Assembly (NCBI GenBank): GCA_024679065.1
Contig: JAGIQG010000021.1
Coordinates: 30,256,001-30,320,000, forward strand
Direction of reading: 5' to 3'
DNA from: Sphyrna mokarran
Lineage: Eukaryota
Length of the DNA: 64,000 nucleotides
Notes under the pieces: generated by a model
Databases searched by the model: none
The model's input: only the letters and a program-made list of their open reading frames with translations
Told to the model about the DNA's origin: nothing
Shown here: positions 4,331-62,990 of the stretch, in pieces
How positions within the stretch are numbered: position 1 is the stretch's first letter
Layout of the letters: each line of letters begins with the position of its first letter
Translations under genes and position numbers: made by a program

Positions 4331-5000
4331 TTCCAGATCCGTAGGACTCTTAAATTGACCTCGTAGGTAGAGGATGTGATTAAGAAGCTATGGTGTACTG
4401 GCCTTCATCAATCAAGGGATTGAATTTAGGAGTCAGGAGATAATGCTGCACCTTTATAAGACCCTTGCCAGACCCCACCTGGAGTACTGTGCTCAATTCT
4501 GGTCACCTCATTACAGGAGGGATGTGGAAGCTATTGAAAGGGTGCAGAGGAGATTTACAAGGATGTTGCCTGGATTGGGTGGCATGCCTTTTGAAGATAG
4601 GTTGAGGGAACTCGGTCTTTTCTCCTTGGAGAGACGAAGGATGAGAGGTGATAGAGTGTATAAGATGTTGAGAGGTATTGATCGAGTGGATTCTCAGAGA
4701 CTTTTTCCCAGGACTGAAATGGTTGTTATGACAGGACATAGGTTTAAGGTGTAGGGGAGGAGGTACAGAGGAGATGTCAGGAGTAAGTTTTTCACTCAGT
4801 GACGGGTGAGTGCATGGAATTGGCTGCCATCGGTGGTGGTGGAGACTAATCTGATATGGTCTTTTAAGAGACTTCTGGATGAGTACATGGGACTTAATAG
4901 GATTGAAGGTTATAGATAAGCCTAGTAGGCAGCGATATGATTGGTGCAACTTGTGTGCAGAAGGGCCTGTTTGTGCTGTAGTTTTTCTATGTTCTATGTT
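4328..5000 (+). mobile_element. CR1 3' fragment
   Basis: ORF 4443-4754 RPHLEYCAQFWSP..RVQRRFTRM; ttctatgttctatg tail. Confidence 0.92.
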
Positions 5001-10420: not shown

Positions 10421-10522
10421 TTAACGTCCTGTGCTTTGAGTTCGCACCAGGTTCATATCTTCATACACTGAGTTTGGAACTCTTGCACGCATTGGCTGGT
10501 CATGATGGCACTTTCTCTTCAA
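10421..10522 (-). CDS. CD7: CD7-like exon 4, cytoplasmic tail (LKRKCHHDQPMRARVPNSVYEDMNLVRTQSTGR*)
   Basis: Acceptor gttttcttctttag|, phase 0, YEDM (YxxM) motif, TAA at 10423-10421; candidate AATAAA at 9929-9924. Confidence 0.88.
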   Translation of the reverse strand: MKRKCHHDQPMRARVPNSVYEDMNLVRTQSTGR

Positions 10523-16500: not shown

Positions 16501-19500
16501 AATCAAAACATGCTCCACATGTTCTATTCAAGAATGCTTATAAAGTGGACTGAGGGAATTTCTAATTTCCTCACTGGTACTATTCAAATTTCTTGTGCAT
16601 AGGGCCATGCCTAATCTTCCACAATGCCAAGTATGACTCTAACGAATGCATATTTTCTGCCTGAAACTGATTGACTCCAATTTTGGTGCTGCACTCAGTC
16701 AAGTGCTGCCTCACTTGTAGAGTTTAAATCTTTTGCCTGTAGTTGAACCAATGCTACAATTAGTTCAGGTTCCGAGTGGTCCTGGCAAAACCCAAACTGG
16801 GCATCAGTGAGAAGGCTATTTCTAAGCAAGTGCCACTTGATACACTGTAGATGCCCCTTTCCATCACTTTGCTGATGATCTGGAATAGACTGATGGAGCA
16901 GTGATTGGCCAGGTTGGTTTTCATGTGCAGAACATACCTGGACAATATTACGCTGAGTGGGTTGTTGGGTGGAGGGTGGGGTGGTGGAGCACGGTGGTTG
17001 GAGGGAGGGCCCATGGGTGATAGTTGGCCACGTTCAACTCAGTAAATATGCACCAGGAAGAAGTGGTGAATCGTGAATCTCTTGCTGGGGCCTGCAGGAA
17101 GTCAATGCCCCTCCCCGCCAACCACCACCACCACCACCACCACACACCATCACGTCATGGAGTTAATGGTCTTGACAAGGGCTGCATGATGGCATAGCGG
17201 TCAGCACTGCTCCCTCACAGTGCCAGGGACTCAGATTCGATTCCGGCTTGAATCGCTGTATGTGTGGAGTTAGCACATCCCCTACCCCCATGTCTGCATG
17301 GATTTTCTCTGGGTACTCCGATTTCCTCCCACAGTCCAATGAAGGGCGTGTTGGGTGGATTGGCAATGCTAAATTAACCCTTGTGTCAGGGAGACTAAGG
17401 AGATTAGAGTAAATGTATGGGGTTGCAGGAATAGGATTTGGATGGGAATGTGGTTAGTGTAGACTTGATGGGCCAACTGGCCTCCTTCTGCACTATAGAA
17501 TTCTATAATTCTAAGAACAACAAAAATGACATATGGTCTCACATAGTCATTCTTTATGTATAATTGTTAAGCAGTAATTTTTTTTTCAGTAAATTACATT
17601 GGATGAAAACTTGAAAGAAACATACCTGACACAAACAACATTGTTCCTTGTGCAAATACATCTGATACTGTAACCTTTCGTATTCCAAACACACAATAGT
17701 AAAAATCAGTGTCATTTTCCTGGAGATTTTTGAGGGTTACAGTGAAATTCTTTTTGTTTCCTTTAAACTCAATGCGGTTGACATATGATTCGTGCACCGT
17801 ATTATTATGATCGTGGACGTAGATCAGATCAGCGAAAGAGGAAAGATTTTTTCTTAAATAGGTGCCCACAAAGCTACCATCTTCAGATGAAAATCTGCAG
17901 TTTATTGAAACAGATCCTCCCTTTTTCACTTGTTGAACAAAAGTAGACTGGAAAATGCAATTCTCTGCAAAATGTAAAATTAAAGATAAAGTCAATGCGG
18001 TTATAATGCTCTGAATGTGATCAATGGTCAAATAAAACGTTTTCTTCATGTAAATAATATCATAATCATTACATTTCATGAGTCATATTAATATTTTAGA
18101 GGATTTTTAGCTTTGGGAAGAATAAAATTAGACTGTGGAATCTTGTAGCTTAATTTTTTTCAGCAACTAATGGAATTTTGAATTTCTTTTCAAATATTAT
18201 AGGTCTCTGTGATAACAATATGTTATTAATTAAAGGAGAATAGAGATGTAGAAAGCAGGGGTCATTTTGTGTAATGTCTAACACTCCATGTTATAGGAGA
18301 AAGGTGTCTGCCTTTCAACAGCTGAATCTAGAAACTAAAATTTCGTTCAGGCCTGAAGCAGGCACAGGTAGTAAGATGCACAAGTACCCCACACCTAATT
18401 TTGGTGATACAGGTGACATGAAGGCACAGTGGTTAACATTGCTGCCTCATGCTGCCAGGCCCGAGTTCGATTCCCAGCTTGTGTCACTGGCTGCGAGGAA
18501 TCTGTGTGGGTTTCCTCCGGATGCTCCGGTTCCTCCCACGATCTGAAAGGTGTGCTGGTTATATGCATTAACTATACTAAATTCTTCCTCAGTGTACCTG
18601 AACAGGTGCTGGAGTTTGACAAATTGGGGATTTTCAAAGTAGCTTCATTGTAGTGTTAATGTAAGCCAACTTGTAACATTAATAAATAATAAAAGCAGTA
18701 CAAATGTCATGCTGCCTGCTCATCTCAATGATAGTCGTGTGCAGATCAGTGCAAAATACATAGTTGCAGGGGCCTGACCATCTGTGGCCAGCACAGTTTA
18801 AAGCTAACCTGCAACTATAAAAGACAGCTTGTTTCTCTTAAAGTGTAAATGCATTTTGGCTGCAACAGTTGGTGGAGCTGATCTTAAAGTATGTAACTGA
18901 AGGAAAAAGACTATTAGTGGAACATTGGCCAGAGAGAAGACTCCCAGGTTTGCTGATCTAGTTTTAGAGTCCTTATGCCAGAAGATCAAAATTCTTGTCA
19001 GAGGTTAGAAGGTTTTGAATATAGGCTGCATAAAGGGAATAGGATCAGGAACAAGGGAGATGAATTCCGGGATTCAGGCTAACATATTGGAAAAATTTCA
19101 TAGATCTCCAAAGTGGCCAAAGTCAGTAATTTATCTTCCACATCTCCTACTCTTCACACCATCAACTTCCCTGCATTCAGTGGTGAGGAATGGGCACTTG
19201 ATGCTCCATCTTATTCTCAAACAATAATCACTGCTGCAAGCCTCATATTCATATCTTGAGTTCCAGCTATTCAGCTATGACAGGTACATTATCTAATCAT
19301 GATGCAGCACAGTCACTAACGCTCTTCTCTTTCTCTTTTGCATGAAATGATCATACGTAACAGGAGGAAGCAGCAGATAATGCTTAAGGAACAGCATTAA
19401 TCTCCATCTCCTGAGTCCTTTGAAGGAGATAGTGCAACATATTATAAGTCCAGCAGTGACAGCAACTAATGCATCCATAACTACTGAACACATTCAGGAT

Positions 19501-22891: not shown

Positions 22892-25142
22892 AAAGGAAAG
22901 GGGAACTGTGCTTAGAGCCCGAGGGAATGGCGGAGATCCTGAATGAATACTTTGCGTCGGTATTCACGAAGGAGAGGGGCTTGTTGACAGCTCCTATCTC
23001 TGAGGGAGCTGTGGACCAGTTGAGGGAAATATCCATACTGAGGGAGGAAGTGTTAGAGCTTCTAGGTAGCATTAAAACTGATAAATCTCCGGGGCCTGAT
23101 GGCATTTATCCCAGGCTGCTTAGGGAGGTGTGAGGTGAAATTGCTGGGACTCTGATGCAAATCTTTCTCTCTTCTTCGGACACAGGTGAGGTCCCAGAGG
23201 ACTGGAGAATAGGTACTGTTGTACCGTTGTTTAAAAAGGGTAGTAGGGATAACTCTGGAAATTATAGGCTGGTGAGTTTGACGTCAGTGGTAGGGAAGCT
23301 GTTGGAGGGGATTCTTAGAGATAGGATGTATAGGCACTTAGAGCGTTGTGATCTGATTAGGGAGACGCAGCATGGATTTGTTAAGAGGAGGTCGTGCCTT
23401 ATGAATCTGGTAGAATTTTTTGAGCATGTGACGAAAACGGTGGACAAAGGGCGAGCCGTTGATGTCGTCTATATGGATTTTAGTAAGGCGTTTGACAAAG
23501 TCCCTCATGGGAGGTTAATTGAGAAGGCTCATGAGGTCAAGGCTCATGGGATACAAGGACAGGTAGCTAGATGGATAAGTAACTGGCTTGGTAATAGAAG
23601 ATAGAGAGTAATAGTGGAAGGGTGTTTTTCTAGCTGGAGATCGGTCACTAGTGGTGTGCCGCAGGGCTCGGTACTGGGACCTCTTCTATTTGTAATATAT
23701 ATAAATGACTTGGAAGAGGGAGTAAGTGGAGTGATCAGCAAGTTTGCAGACGATACAAAGATGGCTGGACTTGCGGATAGTGAGGAGTATTGTCAAGCGA
23801 TGCAGCAGGGCATAGGCTGGTAACTTGGGCAGACAGATGGCAGATGGAATTCAATCCTGATAAATGTGAGGTGATGCATTTCGGAAGAAATAATGTAGGG
23901 GGGAGGTATTTGATAAAGGGTAGACCTATTAAGAGTATAGAAACGCAGAGGGACCTGGGGGTGCAGGTGAACAAGTCTCTGAAGGTGGCAGAGCAAGTGG
24001 AGAAGGTTGTGAAGAAAGCATATAGTATGCTAGCCTTTATAGGAAGGGGTATAGAGTACAAGAGCTGGCCTTTAATGTTGCAGTTGTATAAAACGTTGGT
24101 TAGACCTCATTTGGAATACTGCATCCAGTTCTGGTCGCCTTACTACCGGAAGGACGTGGAGACTCTGGAGAGAGTGCAGAGGAGGTTTACCAGGATGCTG
24201 CCTGGTATGGAAGATCTGAGTTACGAGGAGAGGTTAGGCAAATTGGGACTGTTTTCCTTAGAAAGACATAGACTTAGAGGAGATCTGATAGAGGTGTACA
24301 AGATTATGAGAGGTATAGATAGAGTAAACAGGGTTAAGCTTTTTCCTAGATGGACTCGAATAGCATGAGGGGTCATGGGCTTAGGTTGAAGGGGGTAAGG
24401 TATAATTTGGATGCTAGAAGGAGTTTTTTCACACAGTGGGTGGTGGGGGTATGGAATGCACTGCCAAGTAAAGTGGTGGAGGCAGGTACTCTGGAGTTAT
24501 TTAAGAAATACTTAGATGGGCACATGAACAGAATGGGAATGGAGGGGTATAGAAAACTGATTTAAAATAGGGATCATGAGCCTTGGGAGTCCCTGGGAAG
24601 TGTGTAAATAGATGATGATATTGATGTACTTGTTTTTATCCTACAGGTGCTTTGGTCCACCTTGTTGTCTAACGAGGGGCATACACGCGATGGGTCGTGA
24701 GAGGGCTGCTCTTGGATTTTTTTCGAGAGTATCCTAGTGCTTCACGTCGTTAGTGTACGCTTGACCTGGACCATTTGATGGGCAACACGACAGCTCAGTG
24801 ACTATCGCTGTGCTGTGCAGATACATGGATTTGGGCCTGTGTCTGTGGGAGTTTGCGCATTCTCCCCGTGCTTGCGCGGGTTTTCTCCGGGTGCTCCGGT
24901 TTCCTCCCACATCCCAAAGATGTGCTCTTAGGCTAATTGGTAAAACAAATTCTCCTAAATTGTCTCAAATTTGGTTTTTAATTCATAGGTCTATAAACAT
25001 AGACAGAGATCACAGGTACAGGTGGGAACATCGGGGTGGCGGCACGGGCTTGTTGGGCCGAAGGGCCTGTTTCCCGTGCTGTTTTGTTCTTTGATCTGTA
25101 CTGCGTGTACTGCGCTGAAATGTTCTATGTTCTATGTTCTAT
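22892..25142 (+). mobile_element. Young 5'-truncated CR1 LINE (RT) with a SINE body in its 3' UTR
   Basis: ORFs 22927-24565 with SPGPDG, NYRxVSLTS, DFSKAFD, GVPQGS, FADD, RPHLEYC; few stops or frameshifts; (GTTCTAT)n tail. Confidence 0.95.
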
Positions 25143-28565: not shown

Positions 28566-29690
28566 TTCTCTGAAGGTGGCAAAGCAAGTGGAGAAGGTTG
28601 TGAAGAAAGCATATGGTATGTTAGCCTTTATAGGAAGGGGTATAGAGTACAAGAGCTGGCCTTTAATGTTGCAGTTGTATAAAACGTTGGTTAGACCTCA
28701 TTTGGAATACTGCGTCCAGTTCTGGTCGCCTTACTACCGGAAGGACGTGGAGAGTCTGGAGAGAGTGCAGAGGAGGTTTACCAGGTTGCTGCCTGGTATG
28801 GAAGGTCTGAGTTACGAGGAGAGGTTAGGCAAATTGGGACTGTTTTCCTTAGAAAGACATAGACTTAGAGGAGATCTGATAGAGGTGTACAAGATTATGA
28901 GAGGTATAGATAGAGTAAACAGGGTTAAGCTTTTTCCTAGATGGACTCGAATAGCACGAGGGGTCATGGGCTTAGGTTGAAGGGGGTAAGGTATAATTTG
29001 GATGCTAGAAGGAGTTTTTTCACACAGTGGGTGGTGGGGGTATGGAATGCACTGCCAAGTAAAGTGGTGGAGGCAGGTACTCTGGAGTTATTTAAGAAAT
29101 ACTTAGATGGGCACATGAACAGAGTGGGAATGGAGGGGTATAGGAAACTAATTTAAAATAGGGATCATGAGCCTTGGGAGTCCCTGGGAAGTGTGTAAAT
29201 AGATGATGATATTGATGTACTTGTTTTTATTCTACAGGTGCTTTGGTCCACCTTGTTGTCTAACGAGGGGCATACACGCGATGGGTCGTGAGAGGGCTGC
29301 TCTTGGATTTTTTTCGAGAGTATCCTAGTGCTTCACGTCATTAGTGTACGCTTGACCTGGACCATTTGATGGGCAACACGACAGCTCAGTGACTATCGCT
29401 GTGCTGCGCAGATACATGGATTTGGGCCTGTGTCTGTGGGAGTTTGTGCATTCTCCCTGTGCTTGCGTGGATTCTCTCCGGGCGCTCCAGTTTCCTCCCA
29501 CATCCCAAAGATGTGCTCTTAGCCTAATTGGCAAAACAAATTCTCCCTAAATTGTCTCAAATTTGGTTTTTAATCCATAGATCTATAAACATGGACAGAG
29601 ATCACGGGTAGAGGTGGGAACATTGGGGTGGCGGCACGGGCTCGTTGGGCCGAAGGGCCTGTTTCCCGTGCTGTTTTGTTCTTTGTTCTA
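28566..29690 (+). mobile_element. 5'-truncated CR1, near-identical sibling of about 23976-25092
   Basis: ORFs 28576-29156 are almost identical to those at 23790-24565; same 3' UTR including the SINE segment. Confidence 0.95.
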
Positions 29691-47689: not shown

Positions 47690-50600
47690 ACATAGAACAC
47701 TACAGCACAAACAGGCCCTTCGGCCCACGAGTTACGCCGATCACATCTATACCTCCCAATCCACAGACCTATCTATAACCCCCTATCCCATTAGTTCCCA
47801 TATACTCATCCAGAAGTCTTTTAAAAGACCCCAGCAAGTTGACCTTTACCACCCCTGACGGCAGCTGATTCCATTCACTCACTATCCTCTGAGTGAAAAA
47901 CTTACCCCTAACATCCCCCCTGTATTTGCTTCCCTGCACCTTAAATCTGTGTCTTCTCGTAGTGACCATTTCAGCTCGGGGAAATAGCCTCTGAGAATCC
48001 ACCCTATCTATTCCTCTCAACATTTTATGAACCTCTATCAGGTCACCTCTCAACCTACGTCTCTCCAGGGAGAAGAGTCCCAGCTCCCTCAACCTATCTT
48101 CATAAGGCCTGCCTCCCAATCCAGGCAGCATCCTTGTAAATCTCCTCTGCACCCTTTCAATAGCCTCTACATCCTTCCTATAGTGAGGCGACCAGAACTG
48201 CGCACAGTACTCCAAGTGGGGTCTGACAAGGGTCTTATAAAGCTGCATCATTACCTCCCGACTCCTAAACTCAATTCCTCGATTAACGAAGGCCAGTACA
48301 CCATACGCCTTCTTGACCACTTCCTCCACCTGTGAGGCCGATTTAAGAGTCCTATGGACCTGGACACCAAGATCCTTCTGCTCTACAACACAGCTAAGAC
48401 TCCTACCCTTGATATTGTATTCCTTCATCCCATTATTCTTGCCAAAATGGACCACTACACATTTATCCGCGTTGAAGTCCATCTGCCACTTCTCCGCCCG
48501 GTCTTGCATCCTGTCTATGTCCCGCTGCAACTTTTGACATCCCTCCAGACCATCACAACACCACCAACCTTTGTATCATCGGCAAACTTACTAACCCATC
48601 CCTCCACTTCCTGATCCAGGTCATTTATGAAAATGACAAACAGCAAGGGTCCCAGAACAGATCCCTGGGGCACTCCACTGGTGACCGACCTCCATTCAAA
48701 AAAAGACCCATCCACAACCACTCTCTACCTTCTGCCGGCAAGCCAGTTCTGGATCCACAAGGCCAAAGCCCCTTGGATCCCATGCCCTCTCACCTTCTCA
48801 AGAAGCCTTGCGTGGGAGGACCTTATCAAACGCCTTGCTAAAGTCCATGTACACCATGTCCACCGCTCTTCCTTCGTCAATGTGTTCAGTCACATTTTCA
48901 AAGAACTCAACTAGGCTCGTAAAGCACGACCTGCCCTTGACAAAACCATGCTGACTATTTCTGATCATTCTAAACTTCTCCAAATGCTCTTAAATCTTGT
49001 CCCTCAGAAGCCTCTCCATCAGCTTACCAACCACTGAGGTCAGACTCACTGGTCGGTAATTTCCTGGACTATCCTTGTTCCCTTTCTTAAAAATAGGAAC
49101 CACATCCGCAATCCTCCAATACTCTGGAACCTCTCCCGTTTCCATGGACAATGCAAAGATCACCGCCAGGGGCTCTGCAATCACTTCCCACAATAACCTG
49201 AGGTACATCCCATCCGGTCCCGACGACTAGTCTATCTTGATAGAATTTAACAGGTCTAACACATCCTCTTTCCTAACATCCACATACTCAATCTTTTCCG
49301 TTTGCCTCAAACCTGCAGTGCAATCTCCCAGTTCACTTTCCACTGTGAATACCGAGGCAAAGTACTCATTAAGCACCTCTGCCATTTCTTCTGGATTCAC
49401 ACAGACTTTTCCCCCTTCACCTTTTATAGGCCCTATTCCTTCTCTTCTCATCCTTTTACTTTTCACATATTTGTAGAAGGCCTTGGGATTCTCCTTAATC
49501 TTACCTGCCAAGGCCTTCTCATGACCCCTCTGGCTCTCCTAATTTCCTTTTTAAGCTCCCTTCTACACACCTTATACTCCTCTAGATCCCTAACATCTCC
49601 TAGCTCTCTGAACCTTTTATACATCTTTCTTTTCTTCCTGACTAGATTCACCACAACCTTTGTGCACCACAGTTCCCGCATCCTACTAAAACCTCCTTGT
49701 CTCCTTGGAACGTTGTCTTGCAGAGCCCCAGACAAACATTCCTTGAATATCCGCCACTTTCCACTCTTCCCCAAGAACGCCTCCTTCCAGTTTATACGTC
49801 CAATTACTTGCCTAATGTTTTCATATTTCCTCTTACTCCAGATAAACACCTTCCTAACCTGCCTGATCCTATCTCTTTCCATTGCTATTGTGAAGGAGAT
49901 AGAATTATGATCTCCATCCCCAAGATGCTCTCCTACCGAGAGATCCGACACCTGTCCTGGCTCATTAGCCAGCACCAGGTCAAGTACAGCCTCTCCACTC
50001 GTAGGCTTATCCACGTACTGTGTCAGGAAACCTTCCTGAACACACCTAACAAACTCTTCCCCATCCAAACTCCTTACCCTTGGGATATTCCAGTCAATGT
50101 TTGGGAAATTGAAATCTTCCATCACGACAACTCTGTTATTTCTACATCTTTCTAGGATCTGTTTCCCTATCTGCACCTCAACTTCCCTGTCACTATTGGG
50201 CGGCCTATAGAATACACCCAGTAGTTATTGACCCTTTGCTGTTCGTAACTTCCACCCACAGGGACTCCGTAGACATTCCCTCCCACCTTCTCTGCAGCCA
50301 TGACACTGTCCTTGATCAACAGTGCCACTCCACCACCTCTTTTGCCCCCAACCCTGTCCCTCCTGAAGCATCTGAATCCCAGCACCTGAAGTACCCAGTC
50401 CTGTCCCTGAGACAACCAAGCTTCAGTAATGGCCACCACATCACACTCCCAAGCAGCAATCCACGCCTTAAGCTCATCTACCTTATTTCCTACACTCCTG
50501 GTGTTAAAATAGACACACCTCAGCCCCTCAGTAAGGATATTTCCCTTTTCCACCACCCGTCTAACCCCCCCCTCATACTGTCTACAGTCCTTCCCTACCT

Positions 50601-51917
50601 GGGAGCTAACTTCCTTGTTCTCAGTCTCATCGATAATCCCACCCCTCAGCCTTTCTGGTTTAAAGTTCCCCCAGAAGTCCTAGCCAGTCTTTCCACCAAG
50701 ATATTAGTCCCCCTAGAATTCAAGTGCCACCCGTCCTTACTGTACAGGTCGCACCTGCCCCTAAAGAGGTCCCAATGATCTATGAACCTGAATCCCTGCT
50801 CCCTGCTCCAGTCCCTCAGCTATGCATTCATCTTGCACCTCATTCTATTCCTGCTCTCACTTTCCCGTAGCGCAGGCAGCAATCCTGAGATTACTACCTT
50901 CGCTTTCTTCTTTTTCAGCTTCCTACCCAGTTCCCTATAATCCCTTTTCATGACTGTCTCCCTCTTCCTGCCTATGTCTGTAGTACCCATATGCACTACA
51001 ACTTCAGATTCCTCACCCTTCCCTTTCAGGATGTCTGGGAGGTGTCCAGAGACATCCTGGATCCCAGCTCCAGGAAGACAAACCACCATCTGCAACTCTC
51101 GCCTGCGTCCACAAAAACGCCTGTCTGAACCCCTCACAGTGGAGTCCTCCTACTGCCTTGCCTCTGTCTTCCTTAGATTTTTGGCATACTGGCTCAGCTT
51201 TAGAGAGCGGGCCACCGCTGCCTCCCTCGGATGAGTTGTCCCCCCTAGTAGTACACAGGCAGGAGTACTTATTATGAAGGGGGACACCCTCCAGTGTGCT
51301 CTCCATCACCCGAGGTTTCCCCTTCCTAATAGTTACCCACGTGCCTTCTTCCTGTTGCCCTGGTGTGACCACCTGCTGATAGCTCTTATCAATTATCTCC
51401 TCATTCTCCCTAATGAGACGAAGATCCTCAAGCTGCATCTCCAGTTCTTTAACCTTGTCCCGTAGGGACTGCAGCTCCACACACTGAGCACAGGTATGGA
51501 TGTCTGGGAGACCAGTAGCCTCCAAGACCTCCCACATCTGGCACTGGCAACAACATACCGGTCTCACATCCATTATTTGCCCCCTTTTAGAAACCCAGAG
51601 GAAAAAGTAATAAAAACTTATAACTTATGCTGTCTCACCCTTCTGGCTTAGGCCTGTGAGCCAAAGCCCTTACAGCCACACAAAAAACAAAAAGCAAAAC
51701 AATCTTACCTGCTCTCTCTCTCTCTCTCTCACCGCTCCATTTTATAGTAAGGTTAAAAAAAACTCTACCCAAGTGTCTTTGCGACACTTTCCGGCATCCG
51801 GTAAATGTTTTAAAAAAAACTAGTAAAAATTAGTTTTAAAAAAAATCGCTCTACTCACCCACAAGCTCTCCTGTCAGAAATTGCTGCCTCTCTTCAGTGC
51901 CCCCAAGGAACAATGAG
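47690..51917 (-). mobile_element. Full-length but frameshifted CR1/HER1-type LINE (5' UTR, ORF1 zinc finger/coiled coil/SGNH esterase, ORF2 APE endonuclease + RT)
   Basis: ORF1 pieces 51013-51573 and 50820-51137 (CxxC..CxxC, VCLPGA, VVVHMGTTD); ORF2 pieces 50556-47769 ([39 protein letters not shown]); GTTCTAT tail; 13-bp TSD accatta(c/t)tatta at 47677-47689 and 51918-51930. Confidence 0.95.
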
Positions 51918-54934: not shown

Positions 54935-56105
54935 AGAGCAACACAGCACGGGAAACAGGCCCTTCGGCCCAACGAGCCCGCGCCGCCATCATAACTATAT
55001 AGTAGCAATTCCATTATCCTAATATAGATTTAGATTATTCCTAATATGGAAGACTCTCACTATAGGGACAATTTGTTTCCCAATCAGCCTAAGAGCGAAT
55101 TTTTGGGTTGTGGGAGGAAACCGGAGTGCCCGGAGAAAACCCACGCAACCATGGGGAGAACGCACAAACTCCCGCAGACACTGGCCCAATTCCAAGTGTC
55201 TGCACAGCCACATCGATAGTCTCTGAGCTGTCATGGTGCCCTTCAGATGGTCCACATAAAGCACTCATTTACGACATGAAGTACCAGGCAACCCATGAAT
55301 CAACATCCAAGAGCTGTCCTCGCAACACCTGCCGAATGCATGCTCATTGTTGGTCAAGTATGGACCGAATTACCTGTGGAAAAAAAGCCGTAGTTAAACA
55401 GTCCTACTATATCCCTCTATCTGCATACCGCTAATGTGGCTGTCCAAGAGACCCTTAAACAGCCCCAGCGTGCCTGCTCCCACCACCTTAATCGGCAGTG
55501 CATTCCACACCCCCACTACCCTTTGTGTGAAAAACTGCCCTCTAATATTCGTCCTATACATAGCCCCCCTCACCCTATGGCCATGACCCCTCGTCCTATC
55601 CATTTCTGAAGGTGGAAAAAGTTTACCTCCATTTACTCTATCTATACTCCTTATAATCTTATACACCTCTATGAGATCCCCTCTAAGCCGACGTCTTTCA
55701 AGGGAAAACAACCCCAGTCTATTTCATCGTTCCTCATAAGACAGTCCTTCCATACCAGGCAGCATCCTGGTAAACCTCCTCTGCACTCTCCCCAAGGACT
55801 CCACATCCTTCCGATAGTACGGAGACCAGAACTGGGCGCAGTATTCCAAGTGAGGCCTAACCAAAGTTCTATACAACTGCAACATCAAACTCCTACTCTT
55901 GTATTCCATACCCTTTTCTATGAAAGCTAACATACTATACGCCTTCTTTATCACCTTCTCCACCTGTGAGGACACCTTCAGAGACTTGTGAACCTGCACC
56001 CCCAATCTCTCTGCGTCTCTATGCTCCGTATAGTTTTACCTTTTATCCTATAATTCTCTTCTACATTTTTCCGGCCAAAATGCATCACCTCGCATTTGTC
56101 CGGAT
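54935..56105 (-). mobile_element. 5'-truncated CR1 (diverged subfamily, also with a SINE in its 3' UTR) inserted in an RTE remnant
   Basis: ORFs 55724-56005 and 55394-55711; SINE-like segment 55080-55245. Confidence 0.9.
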
Positions 56106-57209: not shown

Positions 57210-60200
57210 CTGTTAAGAGAAAACAAAAATCTTAATTGATAACAGAAGACACAAGACTTTGAAAAATAGGCTAACTTTTGTAAATGTACCTACCCTTCAG
57301 ATTCTGCATACACTTTCTAACTGCTGAAATAAAAACAAAACAATAATTAATCCACTGTTGAGGCACGTAATACTTAATATGAATTAACCTGCCCGGCTGT
57401 GAAAATTTGCTGTTCATTATTCCTTATATTTCTAAAATTCTGAATCAAAATTTATTTCTTTATTTATTAATCATAAGTAGGCTTACATTAACACTGCAAT
57501 GAAGTTACTATGGAAATCTGCTGGTTGCCATACTCCAGTGCCTGTTTGGGTACACTGAGGGAGAAAGTAGCATGACCAATGCACCTAACTGGACTGTGGG
57601 AGGAAACCTGAGCACCTGGAGGAAACCCACACAGATACGAAGAATGTGCAAACTCCACACCGACAGTGACCCAAGCTGGGAATTGAACCCGGGTCCCTGG
57701 CACTGAAGCATCAGTGCTAATCACTGTGCCACTATACCATCTAATAATATACTAAAGGCAGTAATCTCAGTACAGTTGCCATCATATTGACAGTTATATG
57801 CAATATTCACATTTTCCTTAATGACCATTCAAATAATTTCTGCTACTTCTTTAGCCATAAACCATAAAAAACTTCATAACCAAACTCATGCAAATTAAGT
57901 TCAATCATAATTCTGTACCAAAGATTACAGCCCTCTGATTTGACAAGGAATGCACTGATTATGTTACCAAATTAGTAAATCCAGAAACTATAGATTTATA
58001 TACCAACTGTACAAGTTCTAAAACTTAATAAAGATGAAGAATCTTGAATATTCTGAAGTCTAGATTCGTAGTTCAAATTCCAACATCACAAAGTGAGCAT
58101 TCAAGTTCAGATATTTCTTTTAAAAACAAGGCTGCGACCACTACCCTGAAGAATGGGCAGCACAGTGACCTGTGTAGAGACTGCACATTCTCTCCATGTC
58201 TGCATGGATTTCCTCCGAGTGCTCTAGTTTACTCCCACAGTCCAAAAGATGTTCTAATTAGATTAAATTCTCCCTCAGTGTACATGAATAGGTACTGGAG
58301 TGCAGCGATGAGGGGATTTTCACAGGATCTTTATTGCAATGTTAATGTAAGCTTGTGACACTAATAAATAAAATTCAGTCATTTTTACAACAGCGTCCTC
58401 AAAAATGTTTTGTAGGAAGGAAAACTGTAGTCTTCTACTTGTAGCACACTCATGTGGTTGCCCCAGCCTTTTTCCAAATTATTGATTTATTACATGACAA
58501 TGGGGATGGTCTACCATCAAGTCATAACAACTCTAAAATAAATACTAACATTGCCAGAGATGGACATATCTAAAGATTTATTTGTTTCCTTCCTTTCTTT
58601 TCCTTCATCCATTCATGTCTCCCTTTACCAAACACCATAACTTGGCGGGTGGGGAACTGCCAAGATAACTAATTCCACACACCTCTGCCAATGTTGCTTG
58701 CTGAATGTGTCTTAATAGAAGGTGCTCAGAGCAGTTCCGTTTGCCTCATCTATGCTTTTCTTCATTGAGAAGCAGAAAAATGTAAATTATGATTTGTTTC
58801 TTGTCTCTCTGCTCATCACCCAACTAAATCTAAAGGTTGTAACTCATTAGAGACAGCTTAAGGTGTCTATAGAAGTCTCCTGAGCAAGCTAATCAGCAAA
58901 CATTTTCCTGATCAATAACGGTATTTGGTTTGGCAGGTCAGCCAAGAGCTTGCTAGTGAATTAGAATGGCAGACAGAATCTGAAACTGCTCAGAATATTT
59001 GAGATTCTTCATCTTTATTAAGTTTTGGAACTTGTACAGTTGGTACACAAGTCTATAGTTTCTGGAGCAGCAGAGGCTGAGGGGAGACCTGATCGAAGTC
59101 TTTAAAATTTTGAGAGGATAGATAGGGTTGACCGTCAGAATCTTCTTCCCAGAATTGAATTGCCTCATACTAGAGAGTCTGCACATAAAGTAGGAAGGAG
59201 AAAGTTCAAAGGAGATTTGAGGGGCAACTTTGTTTTTTTACAGAGTCGTAGGTTTCTGGAACACTCTGCCGTTTACAAAATTACTTGTTGTAATTATTTG
59301 AAGAATAAGTAATATAAACTTACTCTGAAACTGTCTGTGGATCTCATATTCATTTTTGTCTGCTATATTCCACACAGTAAGAAGTCTCACAACACCAGGT
59401 TAAAGTCCAACCAGTTTATTTGATAGTAATCCCACAAGCTTGTAGGATTAGTATCAAATAAACTGGGTGGACTTTAATCTGGTATTGTGAGACTTCTTAC
59501 TGTGTTTAGCCTAGTCCAATGCCAGCATCTCTATGTCATATTCCACACAGCACAGGTATAATTGTCTTTAGGGATATGAGAGGGACATTTAAAGGTTTTT
59601 AGATAAACACATGAATATGCGAGGCACAGAGAAGTATGCACCAAGGGAAGGCAGAAGGTATTAGATTAATTCGGCATCATGTGGGCACAACATAGTGGGC
59701 TAAAGGGCCTGCTCCCATGCTATATGGTTTTATGTTCTATGTTCTATGTTCTATAATTGAATTGGTTACCAGATTATAGGCACGTGCAAAGGCTGAGGAA
59801 AAGTATTTTCAACAGAAGCTGATATAATCATTCTTGCAATAATTACAACTTTTAAAAGGGGCCAGAAACATTTTCTATGATCACCGTACCTGGCTGACTT
59901 GTTTTCTGCAGTTGCAAAATGACCAAGACTGCTAGTGCAAGAAAACCTACTCCAATAATCACAAAGACAGCAACGAGATTTGATTTCTTCCTTTTTACTG
60001 GTTGAGTTGATTTCAAGTCTGAAAATGAAAATGCATTGGTAGTTGCGGGGGGAGAACAATTTAATTAATTGTTAATTCTAGCATCAATCTTTGTATGCAT
60101 AACTTATTTCTATGTTTCCATGACTAAGACAACAGCAAAGTCGACATTCAAACAATACTCTGAGATAAAAGACAACAAGAGTTTATAAAGATCCACAAGC

Positions 60201-62529
60201 TTCTAAGAGGATATAGTCATGAGTATTAAATAGTCATGTGGCATTATTCACATATTGAGAGAAAATAGAATGAATTTAAGTTTTTAAATATTAATTATTC
60301 ATTAAAATTAATAATTAAAAAAGAATTTGTTGAAATGATTTGAAGAATAAGTGCTATGAACTTACCCCAAAGTTGTCCCTGGATCTCATATACATTCTTG
60401 TCAATATTCCACACAGCACAAGTATAATTGTCTTCCGAGGTAATTTGCCTTTTATTGATTTGAAGTATGCTGGTGATCTTCATTAGTCCTGCTGGGGTTT
60501 TATTACTGTAACTATTAGACTCAGATGTGAGATTTCCATTGACAAACCAATGTATCTGTGCCTGTGGATATCCAGTTGTTTCACAATTTAGATTTATAGT
60601 GCTCATCGTATTTGAGTGTAAGGTCACTTCTGGCAAACTGTATGGAGCTAAACATGATTATGCTATTATTATTGTGAAGAAAAAACATTTCTGCACCCAG
60701 TAAAAAACAACAGTTCTCAGTCAATAGTAATTCTGAGATTTACCACAATAAATTAATTACAATTAGATCAGCTTTACACTGAAATTACTTTGATAGTTAT
60801 AATGGAGAAAATATTTAGTGGTGTCACTTTGTGATTTTGACCTGTGCTCTTAATATTTCAATTCAAAACTCATTAGTCAGATTTTGTTTTGCCTTTCTTT
60901 CTATGTTTTGTGTCAAATATATGCTTGTATAGAAATCTTGGATATTTTTGTAGAAAACATCTGCAACCTCTGCAAATCAAGCTTATTTAGTATTGATAGA
61001 CTGGATATTGAGTTTGATTACATAGTAAGTAGGGAGTGTGCATCAAATCATAGAACATAGAAATTGGAAGCAGGGCCGAATGGCCTATTCCTTCCAGCCT
61101 GCTCCACCATTCATTTTAGCCATGGCTGATCATCAAATTTAATATCCTGATTTCCCTCTTCCTCCCATATCCCCTTTGCACCAAAAGCAATATCTAATTT
61201 CTTCAAATCAGACAATGTCTTGGCCTCAATTATATTCTGTGGTACTCACTAGATGAAGAAATTTCTTCTCACCTCATTCTAATAGATTCACCCCTTATCC
61301 CTAGTTCTGGATTCCCCTACCAAAGGGAACATTTTTTCTGAATCTACACTGTCTAACCCTCTTTAGAGAGTTTAAAAGTTTATTTATTGGTGTCACCAAT
61401 AGGCTTACATTAACTCTACAATGATGTTACTGTGAAAATCCCCTCAATACCACACTCCAGCATCTGTTCAGGTACACTGAGAAAGGTTTAGCATGGCCAA
61501 TGCACCTAACCACCACATCTTACGGTCTGTGGGAAGAAACCCACTCTGATACAGTGAAAATGTGCAGACTCTACACAGACAGTGACCCAAGTCCCTGATG
61601 CTGTAAGGCAGCAGCGTGAACCACTGTGCCAATTTTATAAGTTTCTAGGAGATCCTTTCACTTTTCTAAACTCCAATGAATACAATCCTAACCTTCTCAG
61701 TCTCTCCTCATATGACAGACCTGCCATTCTTGATATCAGCCTGGCAGCCTTTCACCGTACTCCCTCTGTACCAAGCAAACCCTGATTATCCTGCCTTACA
61801 ATGTGATCACCTAAATCATCAATGCACCCTCCTCTAAGTTAATGGCTAAAATATGTTTTGAGATGTTCCAAAGACATGAAAGGTTTTCTAGAAGTGCACA
61901 ATCACGATTTCTTCTCTCAACACGATTCAGGTTATAGCTTACATTTTGCCTATCTCACATGTCAAGATTTTAGATGCGAGAATAAAATAAGAATTTGATG
62001 CTAATTAAAGGCAACCAATACAAGGGAGAATATGAGAAAAAGGATAATCTTACTCACCTTTAACCCTGAATATGATGTATTCATATGTGTGACCGGAAGT
62101 TGTTTGCAAATAATATCGATAAGTCCCTTCATCTGTCAGTTGTGTTTCCTGGATTAACAGTGATACATCATCTGAATTTGGATGAACTAATTTAATTCGA
62201 CTTGGAGATACCGTATTATCTGAACTGAATACGAGACTTCTATTGTCCTCCGTTTTACTCAGTTCAATGCGAATATATGTTTGTACTATTGATGATTTGA
62301 TTGAGCATGTTAGTTTAGTGTCTTCATTTAATATTCCTGTCACTACATCCTCACAATCTAACGTCACAAAGTCTGAAAAACAAGAATTTCCATTAGTTCA
62401 CATTGCCTGAGTGATAATCGGTGTTCGATGAAGTATAAACTGAGGAACACTTTAGTACTTACTCTGTGTAAAGGATGGACTTGCGCATACGATAATATTA
62501 AGGAAAATTATTGCACGGTGTAAACCCAT
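57187..62529 (-). CDS. SECTM1-like / B7-family type I membrane protein (leader-V-C-TM-short tail), about 281 aa, 6 coding exons
   Basis: Exons 62529-62463, 62372-62058, 60647-60366, 60018-59890, 57323-57294 and 57209-57187 total 846 nt, all phase 1 with GT-AG. The V domain has a SECTM1-type Cys pattern and the C domain has B7-family motifs. The last two exons are less certain. Confidence 0.82.
57294..57323 (-). CDS. Probable 30-nt cytoplasmic exon (AVRKCMQNLK)
   Basis: Strong acceptor ttgttttgtttttatttcag| (NAGNAG), donor AAGG|gtaggt, phase 1-1. Confidence 0.62.
57455..57740 (-). mobile_element. SINE, alternative-tail subfamily
   Basis: Well-preserved head, core and tail. Confidence 0.85.
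57980..59066. repeat. Inverted duplicate pair of about 76 bp (57980-58055 and 58991-59066)
   Basis: tccagaaactataga..accaactgtacaagtt..aaacttaataaagatgaagaatct..aatattctg and its reverse complement; about 6 mismatches. Confidence 0.85.
59283..59568 (-). pseudogene. Relic duplicate of the 3' end of the C-domain exon plus splice donor and intron start, split by a hairpin element
   Basis: With 59378-59537 and one TSD copy removed it reads KDNYTCAVWNIADKNEYEIHRQFQ|gtaagt, versus EDNYTCAVWNIDKNVYEIQGQLW|gtaagt in the real exon. Similarity continues about 40 nt into the intron (acttattcttcaaat..caacaa). Confidence 0.85.
59378..59537. mobile_element. Hairpin element of the same family, 13-bp TSD
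   Basis: Imperfect palindrome centred on aagctt; TSD atattccacacag at 59365-59377 and 59538-59550. Confidence 0.85.
59890..60018 (-). CDS. Stalk + transmembrane exon (DLKSTQPVKRKKSNLVAVFVIIGVGFLALAVLVILQLQKTSQP)
   Basis: Acceptor ttttcattttcag|, donor CAG|gtacgg, phase 1-1, 21-aa hydrophobic helix. Confidence 0.86.
60366..60647 (-). CDS. B7-type Ig C-domain exon (APYSLPEV..LNCETTGYPQAQIHW..ITSIL..NYTCAVWN)
   Basis: ORF 60295..60636; acceptor catgtttag|, donor |gtaagt. The APY linker and CxxxGYPxAxIxW are characteristic of PD-L1/PD-L2/B7-H3 membrane-proximal domains. Confidence 0.9.
61048..61785 (-). mobile_element. CR1 3' fragment with nested SINE (about 61372-61630) in the V-C intron
   Basis: catagaacatagaa tail, YEERLRRLGLYSLEF remnant, SINE body. 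Confidence 0.75.
62058..62372 (-). CDS. Atypical Ig V-like exon (NFVTLDCEDVVTGILNEDTKLTC...DVSLLIQETQLTDEGTYRYYLQT...IFRVK)
   Basis: ORF 62050..62367; acceptor ttgtttttcag|, donor |gtgagt; E/F-strand V motif SLLIxxTQLxDEGTY, but Tyr in place of the F-strand Cys. Confidence 0.9.
62463..62529 (-). CDS. SECTM1/B7-like signal peptide exon MGLHRAIIFLNIIVCASPSFTQ
   Basis: ggtaATGG start, hydrophobic core, donor A|gtaagt, 90-nt intron to the V exon. An upstream acceptor-like tattagcag suggests a 5' UTR exon further upstream. Confidence 0.85.
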
Positions 62530-62990
62530 TACCGGAATTCAGTTCACCTGCTAATATGAAGATAATAGAGAAAAATCACTAAAAACACGAGGCTTTTGTT
62601 TCACACACAAAAGGATCAAGTCTTGTTAATGGGTCAGAAAGCGGCAGACAAACTTATTCAGGGAGGGCAGTGGGACCCAGGCATTAACATCATTTGAGGA
62701 CAGTGGTCTGTCCCTTTCAACCATTTCCCCCCAGTGTAGATTTCATCGGGAATTTCATGGGAGGATGGAAGCATTCAAATTCACCTCAGATATATTTGCA
62801 TTGCTGGGAACGTTAGCTTTACACAAATGTCAACAAAATAATTCTTAAGTTTCTGAAAGTCAAACTGTACCTTTTGTGCTCAGCAAAATGCCGACCTGTC
62901 CAACCAGTTCAAACTAACTCAAGGGAAATCAACAATACAACATCCCACACTTGGTGAAAGTGTTTCAGGGATCCGGACACCGCTGGAATC

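What the first reader, a model, noticed from the sequence alone, without database searches (positions are those of the whole stretch)
60366..62372. SECTM1-type V domain fused to a B7-type C domain: possible link between SECTM1 and the B7 family
Seen: the V exon has only two Cys, LDCEDVV (A strand) and KLTCSI (B strand), with 15 residues between them. There is no C-strand Trp (YIRIELSK), and the F strand reads DEGTYRYYLQ with no Cys. From memory, human SECTM1 has the same pattern (PICTEGVV..VMSCNI..VNIKLR..AGLYMWHL), implying an A-B disulfide instead of B-F. Mammalian SECTM1 has only this one Ig domain, whereas here it is followed by VKAPYS and a C domain with CETTGYPQAQIHW..NYTCAVWN, very like PD-L1/PD-L2/B7-H3. 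Inference: SECTM1 may be a B7-family gene that lost its C exon in the mammalian lineage. Automated pipelines would probably label this gene CD276-like or PD-L1-like from the C domain alone.
Basis: partly seen in the sequence, partly recalled or inferred. Interest (0 to 1): 0.88.

Follow-up and report, generated by a model that had tools for sequence, protein, structure and literature searches.

The report
Shark B7-like gene beside CD7
An expressed shark gene next to CD7 encodes a two-domain, B7-like membrane protein whose outer domain has the same unusual cysteine pattern that is published for SECTM1, the mammalian CD7 ligand, so the two may share an origin, although this could not be tested directly.

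Summary
On the minus strand there is an intact gene with leader (62463-62529), V (62058-62372), C (60366-60647) and TM (59890-60018) exons. A spliced contig identical to the window joins V to C to TM, and another joins leader to V.

The V exon has only two Cys (C6, C22), no Trp, and Tyr at the F-strand Cys position. This is not private to this gene. Both Cys are present in all 46 distinct family V domains from sharks, rays, eels, Amia and characiforms, and 32 of the 46 lack the F-strand Cys.

The C exon is B7-type: B7-H3 is the top hit by sequence and by fold. Public pipelines label relatives CD276-, PD-L1/2- or BTN1A1-like.

The SECTM1 link is only circumstantial:
- A CD7-like gene lies 42 kb downstream on the same strand.
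- Published SECTM1 invariants (C38, C55, GxYxWxL) fit the shark spacing (PMC4603632).
- Skates have C-less V-TM relatives.

No SECTM1 sequence could be obtained, so no profile comparison was run. None of the 33 phmmer hits looks like SECTM1, though 13 were not looked up by name.

First-stage readers noted this locus before on this same genome (s1-886767, s1-886872, s1-886801), not on other DNA.

Verdict: a real, conserved B7-family variant; SECTM1 ancestry is plausible (about 0.5) but unproven.

The parts
62463..62529 (-). Leader exon (coding part): ATG at 62529-62527, 22 codons (MGLHRAIIFLNIIVCASPSFTQ) plus one base; donor GT at 62462-62461.
   Evidence: A spliced joint 62463|62372 is seen in a contig with 0 differences (record 6).
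62058..62372 (-). IgV exon, 315 nt, phase 1 at both ends. Cys only at residues 6 (A strand) and 22 (B strand), no Trp, Tyr86 at the F-strand Cys position.
   Evidence: translation; Pfam V-set, 9.8e-10; AF2 pLDDT 89.9 and strand map; joints at both ends.
60366..60647 (-). IgC exon, 282 nt, phase 1 at both ends. Canonical Cys pair (C21, C76), Trp33 and a GYPQAQIHW motif; B7-type constant domain.
   Evidence: (Ig_3 1e-11, C2-set_3 1e-7, C2-set_2 3e-6, C1-set 6e-6). (CD276 1.5e-10, PD-L2 1e-6, PD-L1 7e-3). (AF2 pLDDT 93.3; Foldseek rank 1 is murine B7-H3, with ICOS-L and human B7-H3 IgC in the top 6). (joints 62058|60647 and 60366|60018).
59890..60018 (-). Stalk plus transmembrane exon, 129 nt, phase 1 at both ends: a basic cluster KRKK followed by a hydrophobic span LVAVFVIIGVGFLALAVLVIL.
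   Evidence: (81% identical to P0003 residues 235-271). In one search, record 1 lies on 59890-60018, and about 1 kb more of that contig lies on nothing within the stretch I laid.
17630..17950 (-). V exon of the neighbouring CD7-like gene. It has the canonical Cys pair and a J-like FAQGTMLFVS end, and lies about 42 kb downstream of the B7-like gene on the same strand.
   Evidence: ORF. (PDB chain 12hp_C, T-cell antigen CD7, 5.8e-9 over residues 6-106; scFv, TCR and pIgR chains score higher). (the only database hit, 63% identical, is named T-cell antigen CD7-like [Scyliorhinus canicula]).
10421..10522 (-). Putative cytoplasmic-tail exon of the CD7-like gene, containing YEDM.
Evidence: Not examined further here.

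Best explanation
The locus is an intact, transcribed gene for a type I membrane protein built as leader, IgV, IgC, TM and a short tail. It belongs to a B7-like family found across jawed fishes. The family's hallmark is an extra Cys in the A strand, present in every V domain examined, 15-16 residues before the B-strand Cys. In elasmobranchs (including this gene) and characiforms, the canonical F-strand Cys and C-strand Trp have been replaced, so the only possible disulfide within the V domain joins strands A and B of the same sheet. The gene sits directly upstream of a CD7-like gene. The most likely reading is that it encodes the CD7 ligand of sharks and is the positional, and probably evolutionary, counterpart of eutherian SECTM1. 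On that reading SECTM1 would be a B7-family derivative that kept the modified V domain and lost the C domain. Shown here: the gene model, its expression, conservation of the Cys pattern, the B7-type C domain and the CD7 neighbour. Inferred: the A-B disulfide, CD7 binding and common descent with SECTM1. I put about 0.9 on the B7-like family gene; the 0.5 given is for the full statement including SECTM1 ancestry.
For: Gene model and expression: one 1662-nt contig with 0 differences joins V to C to TM with GT..AG introns, and a second contig joins leader to V.

Family: one search gave 33 phmmer hits. Sixteen are family members, from 5 shark, 4 ray or skate, 2 eel, 1 Amia and 2 characiform species (names). 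One search adds further members.

Cys pattern. Both Cys are present in all 46 distinct family V domains. The F position is Tyr in 30, Phe in 2 and Cys in 14. All 28 distinct non-family V domains in the same hit set keep the F-strand Cys and lack the A-strand Cys.

B7 type: for the C domain. For the V domain, the profile hits B7-H4 IgV at 5.3e-10, CD276 and BTN1A1, and VIA-align gives Z 12.5-14.1 to B7-H6, BTN, B7-H3, B7-H4, PD-L1 and PD-L2.

CD7 neighbour. The ORFs of 100 aa or more listed between the two genes look like retroelement remains by eye and were not searched.

SECTM1 side, from papers. Human SECTM1 lies close to CD7 on 17q25 and binds it (PMC3769348, passages). SECTM1 has two invariant Cys (38 and 55), a predicted atypical same-sheet disulfide, and G113xYxWxLxGxQ123 (PMC4603632, section 18). 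The shark has C6 and C22, then G82xY84xY86xL88 60 residues after the second Cys, against 58 in SECTM1.

C-domain loss is possible within the family: skate genes encode V-TM (P0010, P0046; 196-197 aa) and V-V-TM (P0006, P0041) forms.
Against: There is no direct sequence or profile evidence for SECTM1 homology.
- None of the 33 phmmer hits looks like SECTM1. None of the 20 looked up by name is a eutherian protein or is named SECTM1. The 13 not looked up are all 576 aa or longer, far above the 246 aa that the EMCLV paper gives for a full-length SECTM1 homologue.
- Three word-indexed searches found no tetrapod member: 19 hits of 1252 candidates; 1 of 32; 1 of 21, the query itself.
- The published analysis calls SECTM1 eutherian-specific, absent from zebrafish, chicken, platypus and marsupials (PMC4603632, section 15).
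- G-x-Y and the following hydrophobic residue are generic V-set features. The Gly of the FG turn is shifted by 3 residues and the motif's Gln is missing.
- Eels and Amia keep the canonical Cys and Trp alongside the A-strand Cys, so the loss of the F-strand Cys may be recurrent and could be convergent in SECTM1 too.
- The Cys-Cys distance in the model could not be read, because the tool returns no coordinates.
- This gene has a C domain, which SECTM1 lacks.
Confidence: 0.5

Rival explanations
1. It is a fish-lineage B7-like family with a modified V domain that happens to lie next to CD7 and has no common descent with SECTM1. The two-Cys pattern of SECTM1 arose independently in eutherians from some other IgSF gene.
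For: No sequence-level link was found. SECTM1 is reported absent outside eutherians (PMC4603632, section 15). The F-strand Cys is retained in some family branches (eels, Amia) and lost in others, so recurrent loss, and therefore convergence, is plausible. Apart from the Cys pair and the aromatic residue, the shared motif residues are generic V-set features. Bianchetti et al. found CD79A, not a B7 protein, by PSI-BLAST.
Against: The rare A-strand Cys at almost the same spacing (16 against 17 residues), an aromatic residue in place of the F-strand Cys, and the same neighbour (CD7) would all have to coincide. An Ig-fold gene cannot arise from nothing in eutherians, and a pre-existing gene linked to CD7 is the most economical source.
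Confidence: 0.36
2. It is simply the shark orthologue or co-orthologue of a named B7 gene (CD276, PD-L1 or PD-L2), as public annotation says.
For: Names given by NCBI to relatives. The C domain's best PDB match by sequence and by fold is B7-H3.
Against: The labels disagree with one another (CD276, PD-L1, PD-L2, BTN1A1, uncharacterized). Per-domain scores to CD276 are low (about 15 bits per domain). The V profile scores B7-H4 above CD276. I recall, from no call, that no named B7 protein has the A-strand Cys. Orthology with CD276 or PD-L was not tested here, because no synteny or tree including true B7 members was possible.
Confidence: 0.1
3. It is a pseudogene or an assembly or annotation artefact.
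For: Degenerate C-exon fragments lie just downstream. The last cytoplasmic exon was not located in the window.
Against: All four exons have open frames and GT..AG borders. Spliced contigs match with 0 differences. Full-length relatives exist in many species.
Confidence: 0.02

Closest known systems
SECTM1 (K12), the eutherian CD7 ligand
   Same: It is next to CD7 (shark; human: PMC3769348 passages). It has two invariant Cys near the N-terminus of a V-like domain at almost the same spacing (16 against 17 residues) and no canonical B-F pair. It has GxYx(aromatic)xL about 58-60 residues after the second Cys (against PMC4603632, section 18). It is a type I membrane protein. Skate relatives share the V-stalk-TM layout.
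   Different: This gene has an additional B7-type IgC domain. The aromatic residue is Tyr, not Trp. The FG-turn Gly is shifted by 3 residues and the motif's Gln is absent. SECTM1 is published as eutherian-specific.
CD276 (B7-H3)
   Same: It has V-C-TM architecture, an APYS linker and a GYPxAxIxW motif in IgC. It is the best PDB match of the C exon by sequence (1.5e-10) and by fold (4i0k_A, E 1.7e-6, TMq 0.78; 9ly5_C, TMq 0.80). Pipelines use this name for relatives.
   Different: The V domain here lacks the canonical disulfide and Trp and carries an A-strand Cys. Orthology was not tested.
PD-L1 / PD-L2, B7-H4 (VTCN1), B7-H6, butyrophilins
   Same: The same V-C layout, and V domains in the same structural neighbourhood: VIA-align Z 12.5-14.1 at rmsd 2.0-2.5 over 96-104 residues. 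B7-H4 IgV is the best single-domain profile hit, at 5.3e-10.
   Different: Their Z values are tied with VSIG4 and the nectin/CD155 group, so the V fold alone does not single out B7. All of these keep the canonical B-F disulfide (recalled, apart from what the alignments show).

Membership tests
B7 family (B7/butyrophilin-like IgSF ligands) | Leader, IgV, IgC and TM exons, one domain per exon, with phase-1 introns | tested here: met
   Exon borders; spliced contigs.
B7 family (B7/butyrophilin-like IgSF ligands) | Membrane-proximal IgC domain of the B7 type | tested here: met
   Pfam C2-set_3 (1e-7) and C2-set_2 (3e-6) are above their cut-offs. PDB sequence search: CD276, PD-L2, PD-L1. Foldseek rank 1 is B7-H3, with ICOS-L at rank 5.
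B7 family (B7/butyrophilin-like IgSF ligands) | N-terminal IgV domain related to B7/BTN V domains | tested here: inconclusive
   V-set at 9.8e-10. The profile hits B7-H4, CD276 and BTN1A1 V domains, and B7/BTN V domains reach Z 12.5-14.1, but they are tied with VSIG4 and nectins. The canonical B-F disulfide and Trp are absent.
B7 family (B7/butyrophilin-like IgSF ligands) | Binds an IgSF receptor on lymphocytes | not testable with these tools
   Needs a binding assay. The CD7-like neighbour is the candidate receptor.
SECTM1 | Two invariant Cys close together (C38, C55 in human) at the N-terminal side of the Ig-like domain, with no classical inter-sheet pair | tested here: met
   C6 and C22, with no other Cys in the V exon. 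Both are present in all 46 family V domains. The spacing is 16 residues against 17 in SECTM1 (PMC4603632, section 18).
SECTM1 | Invariant motif GxYxWxLxGxQ | tested here: not met
   The shark reads G82-T-Y84-R-Y86-Y-L88-Q-T-T-S-G93-H. G, Y and L are in register, Trp is replaced by Tyr, the second Gly is displaced by 3 residues, and there is no Gln.
SECTM1 | Single Ig-like domain followed by stalk and TM | tested here: not met
   This gene has V plus C. Only skate relatives (P0010, P0046) have V-stalk-TM.
SECTM1 | Gene adjacent to CD7 | tested here: met
   A CD7-like V exon lies at 17630-17950 on the same strand. For human adjacency, see PMC3769348 passages.
SECTM1 | Significant sequence or profile similarity to eutherian SECTM1 | not testable with these tools
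None of the 33 phmmer hits looks like SECTM1.
SECTM1 | Binds CD7 | not testable with these tools
   Needs an experiment.

The most novel reading that the evidence does not exclude
SECTM1 is not a eutherian invention. It is the truncated survivor of an ancient B7-family ligand gene that has stayed physically linked to its receptor gene CD7 since before sharks and bony vertebrates split. The family's extra A-strand Cys allowed the B-strand Cys to change partner (A-B in place of B-F). That change took place in elasmobranchs, in characiforms and on the line to SECTM1. The C domain was lost on the way to eutherians, as it was independently in skates.
Probability: 0.45. Interest if true: 0.75.

Novelty: new variant of a known kind. 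Interest (0 to 1): 0.6.

Why it matters
If the link holds, it gives an origin and a family (B7) to SECTM1, which the literature I could search treats as a eutherian-specific orphan. It would also add CD7/SECTM1 to the small set of co-stimulatory receptor-ligand pairs whose genes have stayed linked over more than 400 million years.

It offers a natural series for studying how an Ig V domain survives loss of its core disulfide: canonical plus an extra Cys in eels and Amia, swapped in sharks and characiforms.

Even if the SECTM1 link fails, the family is a distinct and widespread fish B7-like group that public annotation mislabels as CD276, PD-L1, PD-L2 or BTN1A1. That mislabelling matters for comparative work on checkpoint ligands.

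Tried and rejected
1. Direct search for SECTM1. phmmer of the V exon against PDB found nothing below 0.03 and no SECTM1 among 41 hits. The profile A1 against PDB gave 1301 hits, of which 60 were shown, with no SECTM1. phmmer against 1.84 billion representatives gave no SECTM1. Two ESM Atlas calls returned only generic V-set or unrelated clusters. Pfam scans of the V exon and of all 15 A1 members at E up to 10 matched only generic Ig families.

2. Word-indexed searches meant to reach tetrapods. The profile A2 gave 19 hits of 1252 candidates, all fish. The Amia V region found only itself among 21 candidates. The third search went to the CD7 neighbour.

3. Reaching SECTM1 through the published poxvirus homologue EMCLV007 (PMC8515872). 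I back-translated the published motif into DNA patterns and scanned viral contigs twice. The 5 and 10 loci returned were not a roughly 166 kb poxvirus genome. I inspected only L001, which looks phage-like; L002-L012 were judged from their contig lengths alone and were not opened.

4. The search for related loci with A1 on viral contigs failed because no stretch was conserved enough.

So CD7 adjacency in other fishes and the CD7-to-SECTM1 walk in mammals were not done.

6. Foldseek against BFVD. Rank 3, A0A650AIS6, is unnamed and 246 aa long, and has the best TMq (0.79). Its length equals that of the 741-nt EMCLV007 ORF, but I could not verify its identity, so I do not use it as evidence.

7. 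The last cytoplasmic exon was sought with the tails of relatives. The only candidate lay in a retroelement and was rejected.

8. Tree of V domains (35 of the 84 domain rows plus the window V). Three family clades are each supported, but their order and the family's separation from two long-branch outgroup rows are unresolved. Independent loss of the F-strand Cys is therefore not shown by the tree.

9. Literature. The searches found no paper linking SECTM1 to B7 or to fishes. One search was a poorly chosen query and gave nothing useful. CAR-T papers print no SECTM1 sequence. Supplements were closed, and the figshare alignment of 58 SECTM1 proteins cited in PMC4603632 could not be seen; it is exactly what the missing test needs.

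Each exon was searched and folded on its own.
Full report
**What is there.** The finding's range (60366-62372) holds two exons of a minus-strand gene.
- I read the sequence and translated each exon on its own.
- The exons are: leader 62463-62529 (ATG at 62529), V 62058-62372, C 60366-60647, and stalk plus TM 59890-60018.
- Every intron is phase 1 with GT..AG ends.

**The gene model is transcribed as read.** The one public run that holds this stretch (X1; kept as contigs and guessed to be RNA) was laid on 59850-62560.
- One 1662-nt contig with 0 differences lies on 62058-62295, then 60366-60647, then 59890-60018. It skips 1410 and 347 bases, and the ends of both skipped stretches read GT..AG on the minus strand.
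- About 1 kb more of that contig lies on nothing within the stretch I laid.
- A second contig (0 differences) joins 62463 to 62372, which is leader to V.
- So V and C are in one spliced molecule of the same species. Contigs cannot give expression level, and the tissue is unknown.
- A further contig joins a leader with 8 differences to the same V-exon start. A 106-nt contig covers 62266-62371. Together these indicate an expressed paralogue that shares the first part of the V exon, in line with earlier notes s1-886872 and s1-886801.

- The 104-residue V exon has Cys only at 6 and 22, no Trp, and Tyr86 where the F-strand Cys should be.
- It is a V-set domain by Pfam (9.8e-10).
- With a 16-row family alignment, AlphaFold2 gives pLDDT 89.9 and the strand map A 3-6, A' 9-12, B 18-25, C 32-39, C' 45-49, D 59-61, E 71-73, F 82-90, G 93-103. 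C6 therefore ends strand A and C22 sits in strand B, and both strands belong to the same sheet.
- An A-B disulfide is an inference. The tool returns no coordinates, so I could not measure the distance.

**It is not a private mutation.** phmmer of the V exon against 1.84 billion representatives gave 33 hits at E of 0.001 or better.
- I looked up names for 20 of them. Sixteen are one family:
  - sharks: Mustelus asterias, Heterodontus, Scyliorhinus torazame, Carcharodon, Chiloscyllium
  - rays and skates: Hypanus, Hemitrygon, Rhinoraja, Amblyraja
  - eels: Anguilla, Synaphobranchus
  - Amia
  - characiforms: Hoplias, Prochilodus
- One search added Leucoraja, more Anguilla and Prochilodus proteins, and three unnamed Logan proteins.
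- I aligned every V domain in the stored proteins to the family profile, keeping the 84 domain rows that cover at least 85 profile positions. Of these, 53 rows (46 distinct) carry both the A-strand and B-strand Cys.
- Among those 46, the F position is Tyr in 30, Phe in 2 and Cys in 14. The 14 are eels, Amia and one unnamed skate-like domain.
- A Trp occurs in the C-strand region in 14 domains: 13 from eels or Amia, plus one Hoplias domain.
- All 28 distinct non-family V domains in the same set have the F-strand Cys and no A-strand Cys.
- All 16 distinct V domains from named sharks and rays lack the F-strand Cys.
- The nearest relative, P0003 of Mustelus asterias, is 64% identical in V, 87% in C and 81% in TM, and is identical over the first 24 V residues. 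It is probably the paralogue, which suggests the window comes from that species or a close one.

**The C domain is B7-type.**
- Pfam gives Ig_3, C2-set_3 (butyrophilin IgC), C2-set_2 (CD80-like) and C1-set, all above their cut-offs.
- The best PDB sequence hits are CD276 (1.5e-10, summed over repeated domains at about 15 bits each), PD-L2 (1e-6) and PD-L1 (7e-3). They stand among generic I-set proteins.
- The AlphaFold2 model (pLDDT 93.3) has murine B7-H3 as Foldseek rank 1 (E 1.7e-6, TMq 0.78), ICOS-L at rank 5 and human B7-H3 IgC at rank 6. C1-set domains of IgNAR and MHC class II follow.

**The V domain is not foreign to B7.**
- The family profile's best single-domain PDB hit is B7-H4 IgV (5.3e-10), and CD276 and BTN1A1 V domains are also listed.
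- VIA-align gives Z 12.5-14.1 for B7-H6, BTN2A1/3A1, B7-H3, B7-H4, PD-L1, PD-L2 and BTN1A1. These are tied with VSIG4 (14.5) and the CD155/nectin group (Foldseek agrees).
- So the gene reads as one B7-like member with a modified V, not as a fusion of two lineages.

**The neighbour.** About 42 kb downstream on the same strand is a V exon with a J-like end.
- It matches PDB CD7 over its full length at 5.8e-9, although scFv, TCR and pIgR chains score higher.
- Its only database relative found, at 63% identity, is named T-cell antigen CD7-like [Scyliorhinus canicula].
- A short ORF with YEDM lies at 10421-10522 (note s1-886930).
- Between the two genes, the ORFs of 100 aa or more that I listed look like retroelement remains by eye. 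I did not search them against any library.
- tblastn with the V, C and TM exons found no further copy in the window apart from the fragments noted below.

**The SECTM1 question.**
- From papers:
  - Human SECTM1 lies close to CD7 on 17q25 and binds it, and in mouse Sectm1a a 'stalk' exon sits between the Ig and TM exons (PMC3769348, passages).
  - Bianchetti et al. (PMC4603632; abstract, sections 18 and 15 read in full) aligned 58 SECTM1 proteins. They report two invariant Cys (38, 55), a predicted atypical disulfide within one sheet, the invariant motif G113xYxWxLxGxQ123, and absence outside eutherians.
  - A poxvirus homologue keeps the same Cys and motif (PMC8515872, passages).
- Shark against those published features:
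  - The Cys are 16 apart, against 17 in SECTM1.
  - G82xY84xY86xL88 starts 60 residues after the second Cys, against 58.
  - An aromatic residue replaces the F-strand Cys in both.
  - The FG-turn Gly is 3 residues later in the shark, and the motif's Gln is absent.
  - G-x-Y and the hydrophobic residue are generic to V-set domains. The specific shared characters are therefore only the A-strand Cys, the aromatic in place of the F-strand Cys, and the CD7 neighbour.
- Skates show that this family can lose the C domain. Amblyraja and Leucoraja isoforms are V-stalk-TM proteins of 196-197 aa, and Rhinoraja and Amblyraja also have V-V-TM forms.

**What I could not do.**
- I obtained no SECTM1 sequence from any tool, so the decisive profile-profile test was not run.
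- Seven of my eight searches found no paper that relates SECTM1 to the B7 family or reports it in fishes. The eighth was a poorly chosen query. These are negative results from one library only.
- Supplements were closed, and the SECTM1 alignment cited by PMC4603632 could not be seen.

**How it most likely works.** It is a glycosylated type I membrane protein.
- It has one N-x-S/T sequon in V and three in C (read).
- It presumably presents its V domain on a B7-type C domain and engages an IgSF receptor through the V-domain face. The linked CD7-like protein is the obvious candidate receptor.
- The core of the V domain is held by aromatic and aliphatic packing (Tyr86, and an aliphatic residue at the Trp position), plus, by inference, a same-sheet A-B disulfide.
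- Shown: the gene, its splicing, its conservation, the fold class and the neighbour. Inferred: the disulfide, the receptor and the descent of SECTM1.

**Verdict.**
The family is real, old and mislabelled.
- The SECTM1 ancestry is a good, testable hypothesis with positional and signature support, but no sequence-level proof. I put it near 0.5.
- The main rival is an unrelated fish B7-like family with convergent Cys loss, at about 0.36.
- Novelty: a new variant of a known kind (B7 family).
- Interest: 0.6, rising to about 0.75 if the SECTM1 link is proven, because it would overturn the published eutherian-specific status and reveal a receptor-ligand gene pair linked since early jawed vertebrates.

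Noticed in passing
window 59328-59375 and 59537-59569, minus strand: Two fragments resemble the 3' end of the C exon (KDNYTCAVWNM; VWNIADKNEYEIHRQF followed by a GT donor-like site and sequence like the real intron). They are separated by about 160 bases that start and end with a repeated CTGTGTGGAATAT-like string. This looks like a remnant of a duplicated C exon split by an insertion. It lies about 320-560 bases beyond the 3' end of the TM exon.
   Followed up: partly
window 62266-62552 (records 4-6): Run X1 holds a second leader variant (8 differences over 91 bases) spliced to the same V-exon start, and a contig shared by both forms over 62266-62371. This points to an expressed paralogue with an identical 5' part of the V exon and a divergent remainder (compare P0003: 64% identity in V, first 24 residues identical).
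   Followed up: partly
window 59890-60018; proteins P0003, P0005, P0007, P0009, P0014: A cluster of basic residues (KRKK here; RKRK, EERKK and KDKKEK in relatives) sits just outside the membrane span on the extracellular side. It could be a processing or shedding site that yields a soluble form, as SECTM1 has; this is speculation. Several relatives end in T/D-x-V/I (TDV, ADI, TQV), which looks like a PDZ-binding C-terminus.
   Followed up: no
proteins P0010, P0046, P0006, P0041 (skates): Skate members of the family lack the C domain: V-stalk-TM isoforms of 196-197 aa, and V-V-TM forms in which a second V replaces the C.
   Followed up: partly
BFVD entry A0A650AIS6 (rank 3): An unnamed viral protein of 246 aa has the best TM-score (0.79, rmsd 2.6) to the shark V model. 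The SECTM1 homologue of equine molluscum contagiosum-like virus is also 246 aa (741-nt ORF, PMC8515872). The identity of the entry was not verified.
   Followed up: no
window 10421-18079, minus strand: A CD7-like gene: a V exon with a J-like FAQGTMLFVS end (about 17630-17950) and a short ORF with YEDM (10421-10522).
   Followed up: partly
window 61033-61760 (the V-C intron): Very many contigs of run X1 pile up here at 90-95% likeness, with many odd joints and loose ends. This is the behaviour of a dispersed repeat, not of this gene's transcript.
   Followed up: no
window 4443-4949, 12350-12700, 23155-24368, 28576-28980, 47769-51573, 55394-55711: ORFs that look like reverse-transcriptase and endonuclease remains, judged by eye and not searched. 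They fill most of the space around and between the two genes.
   Followed up: no
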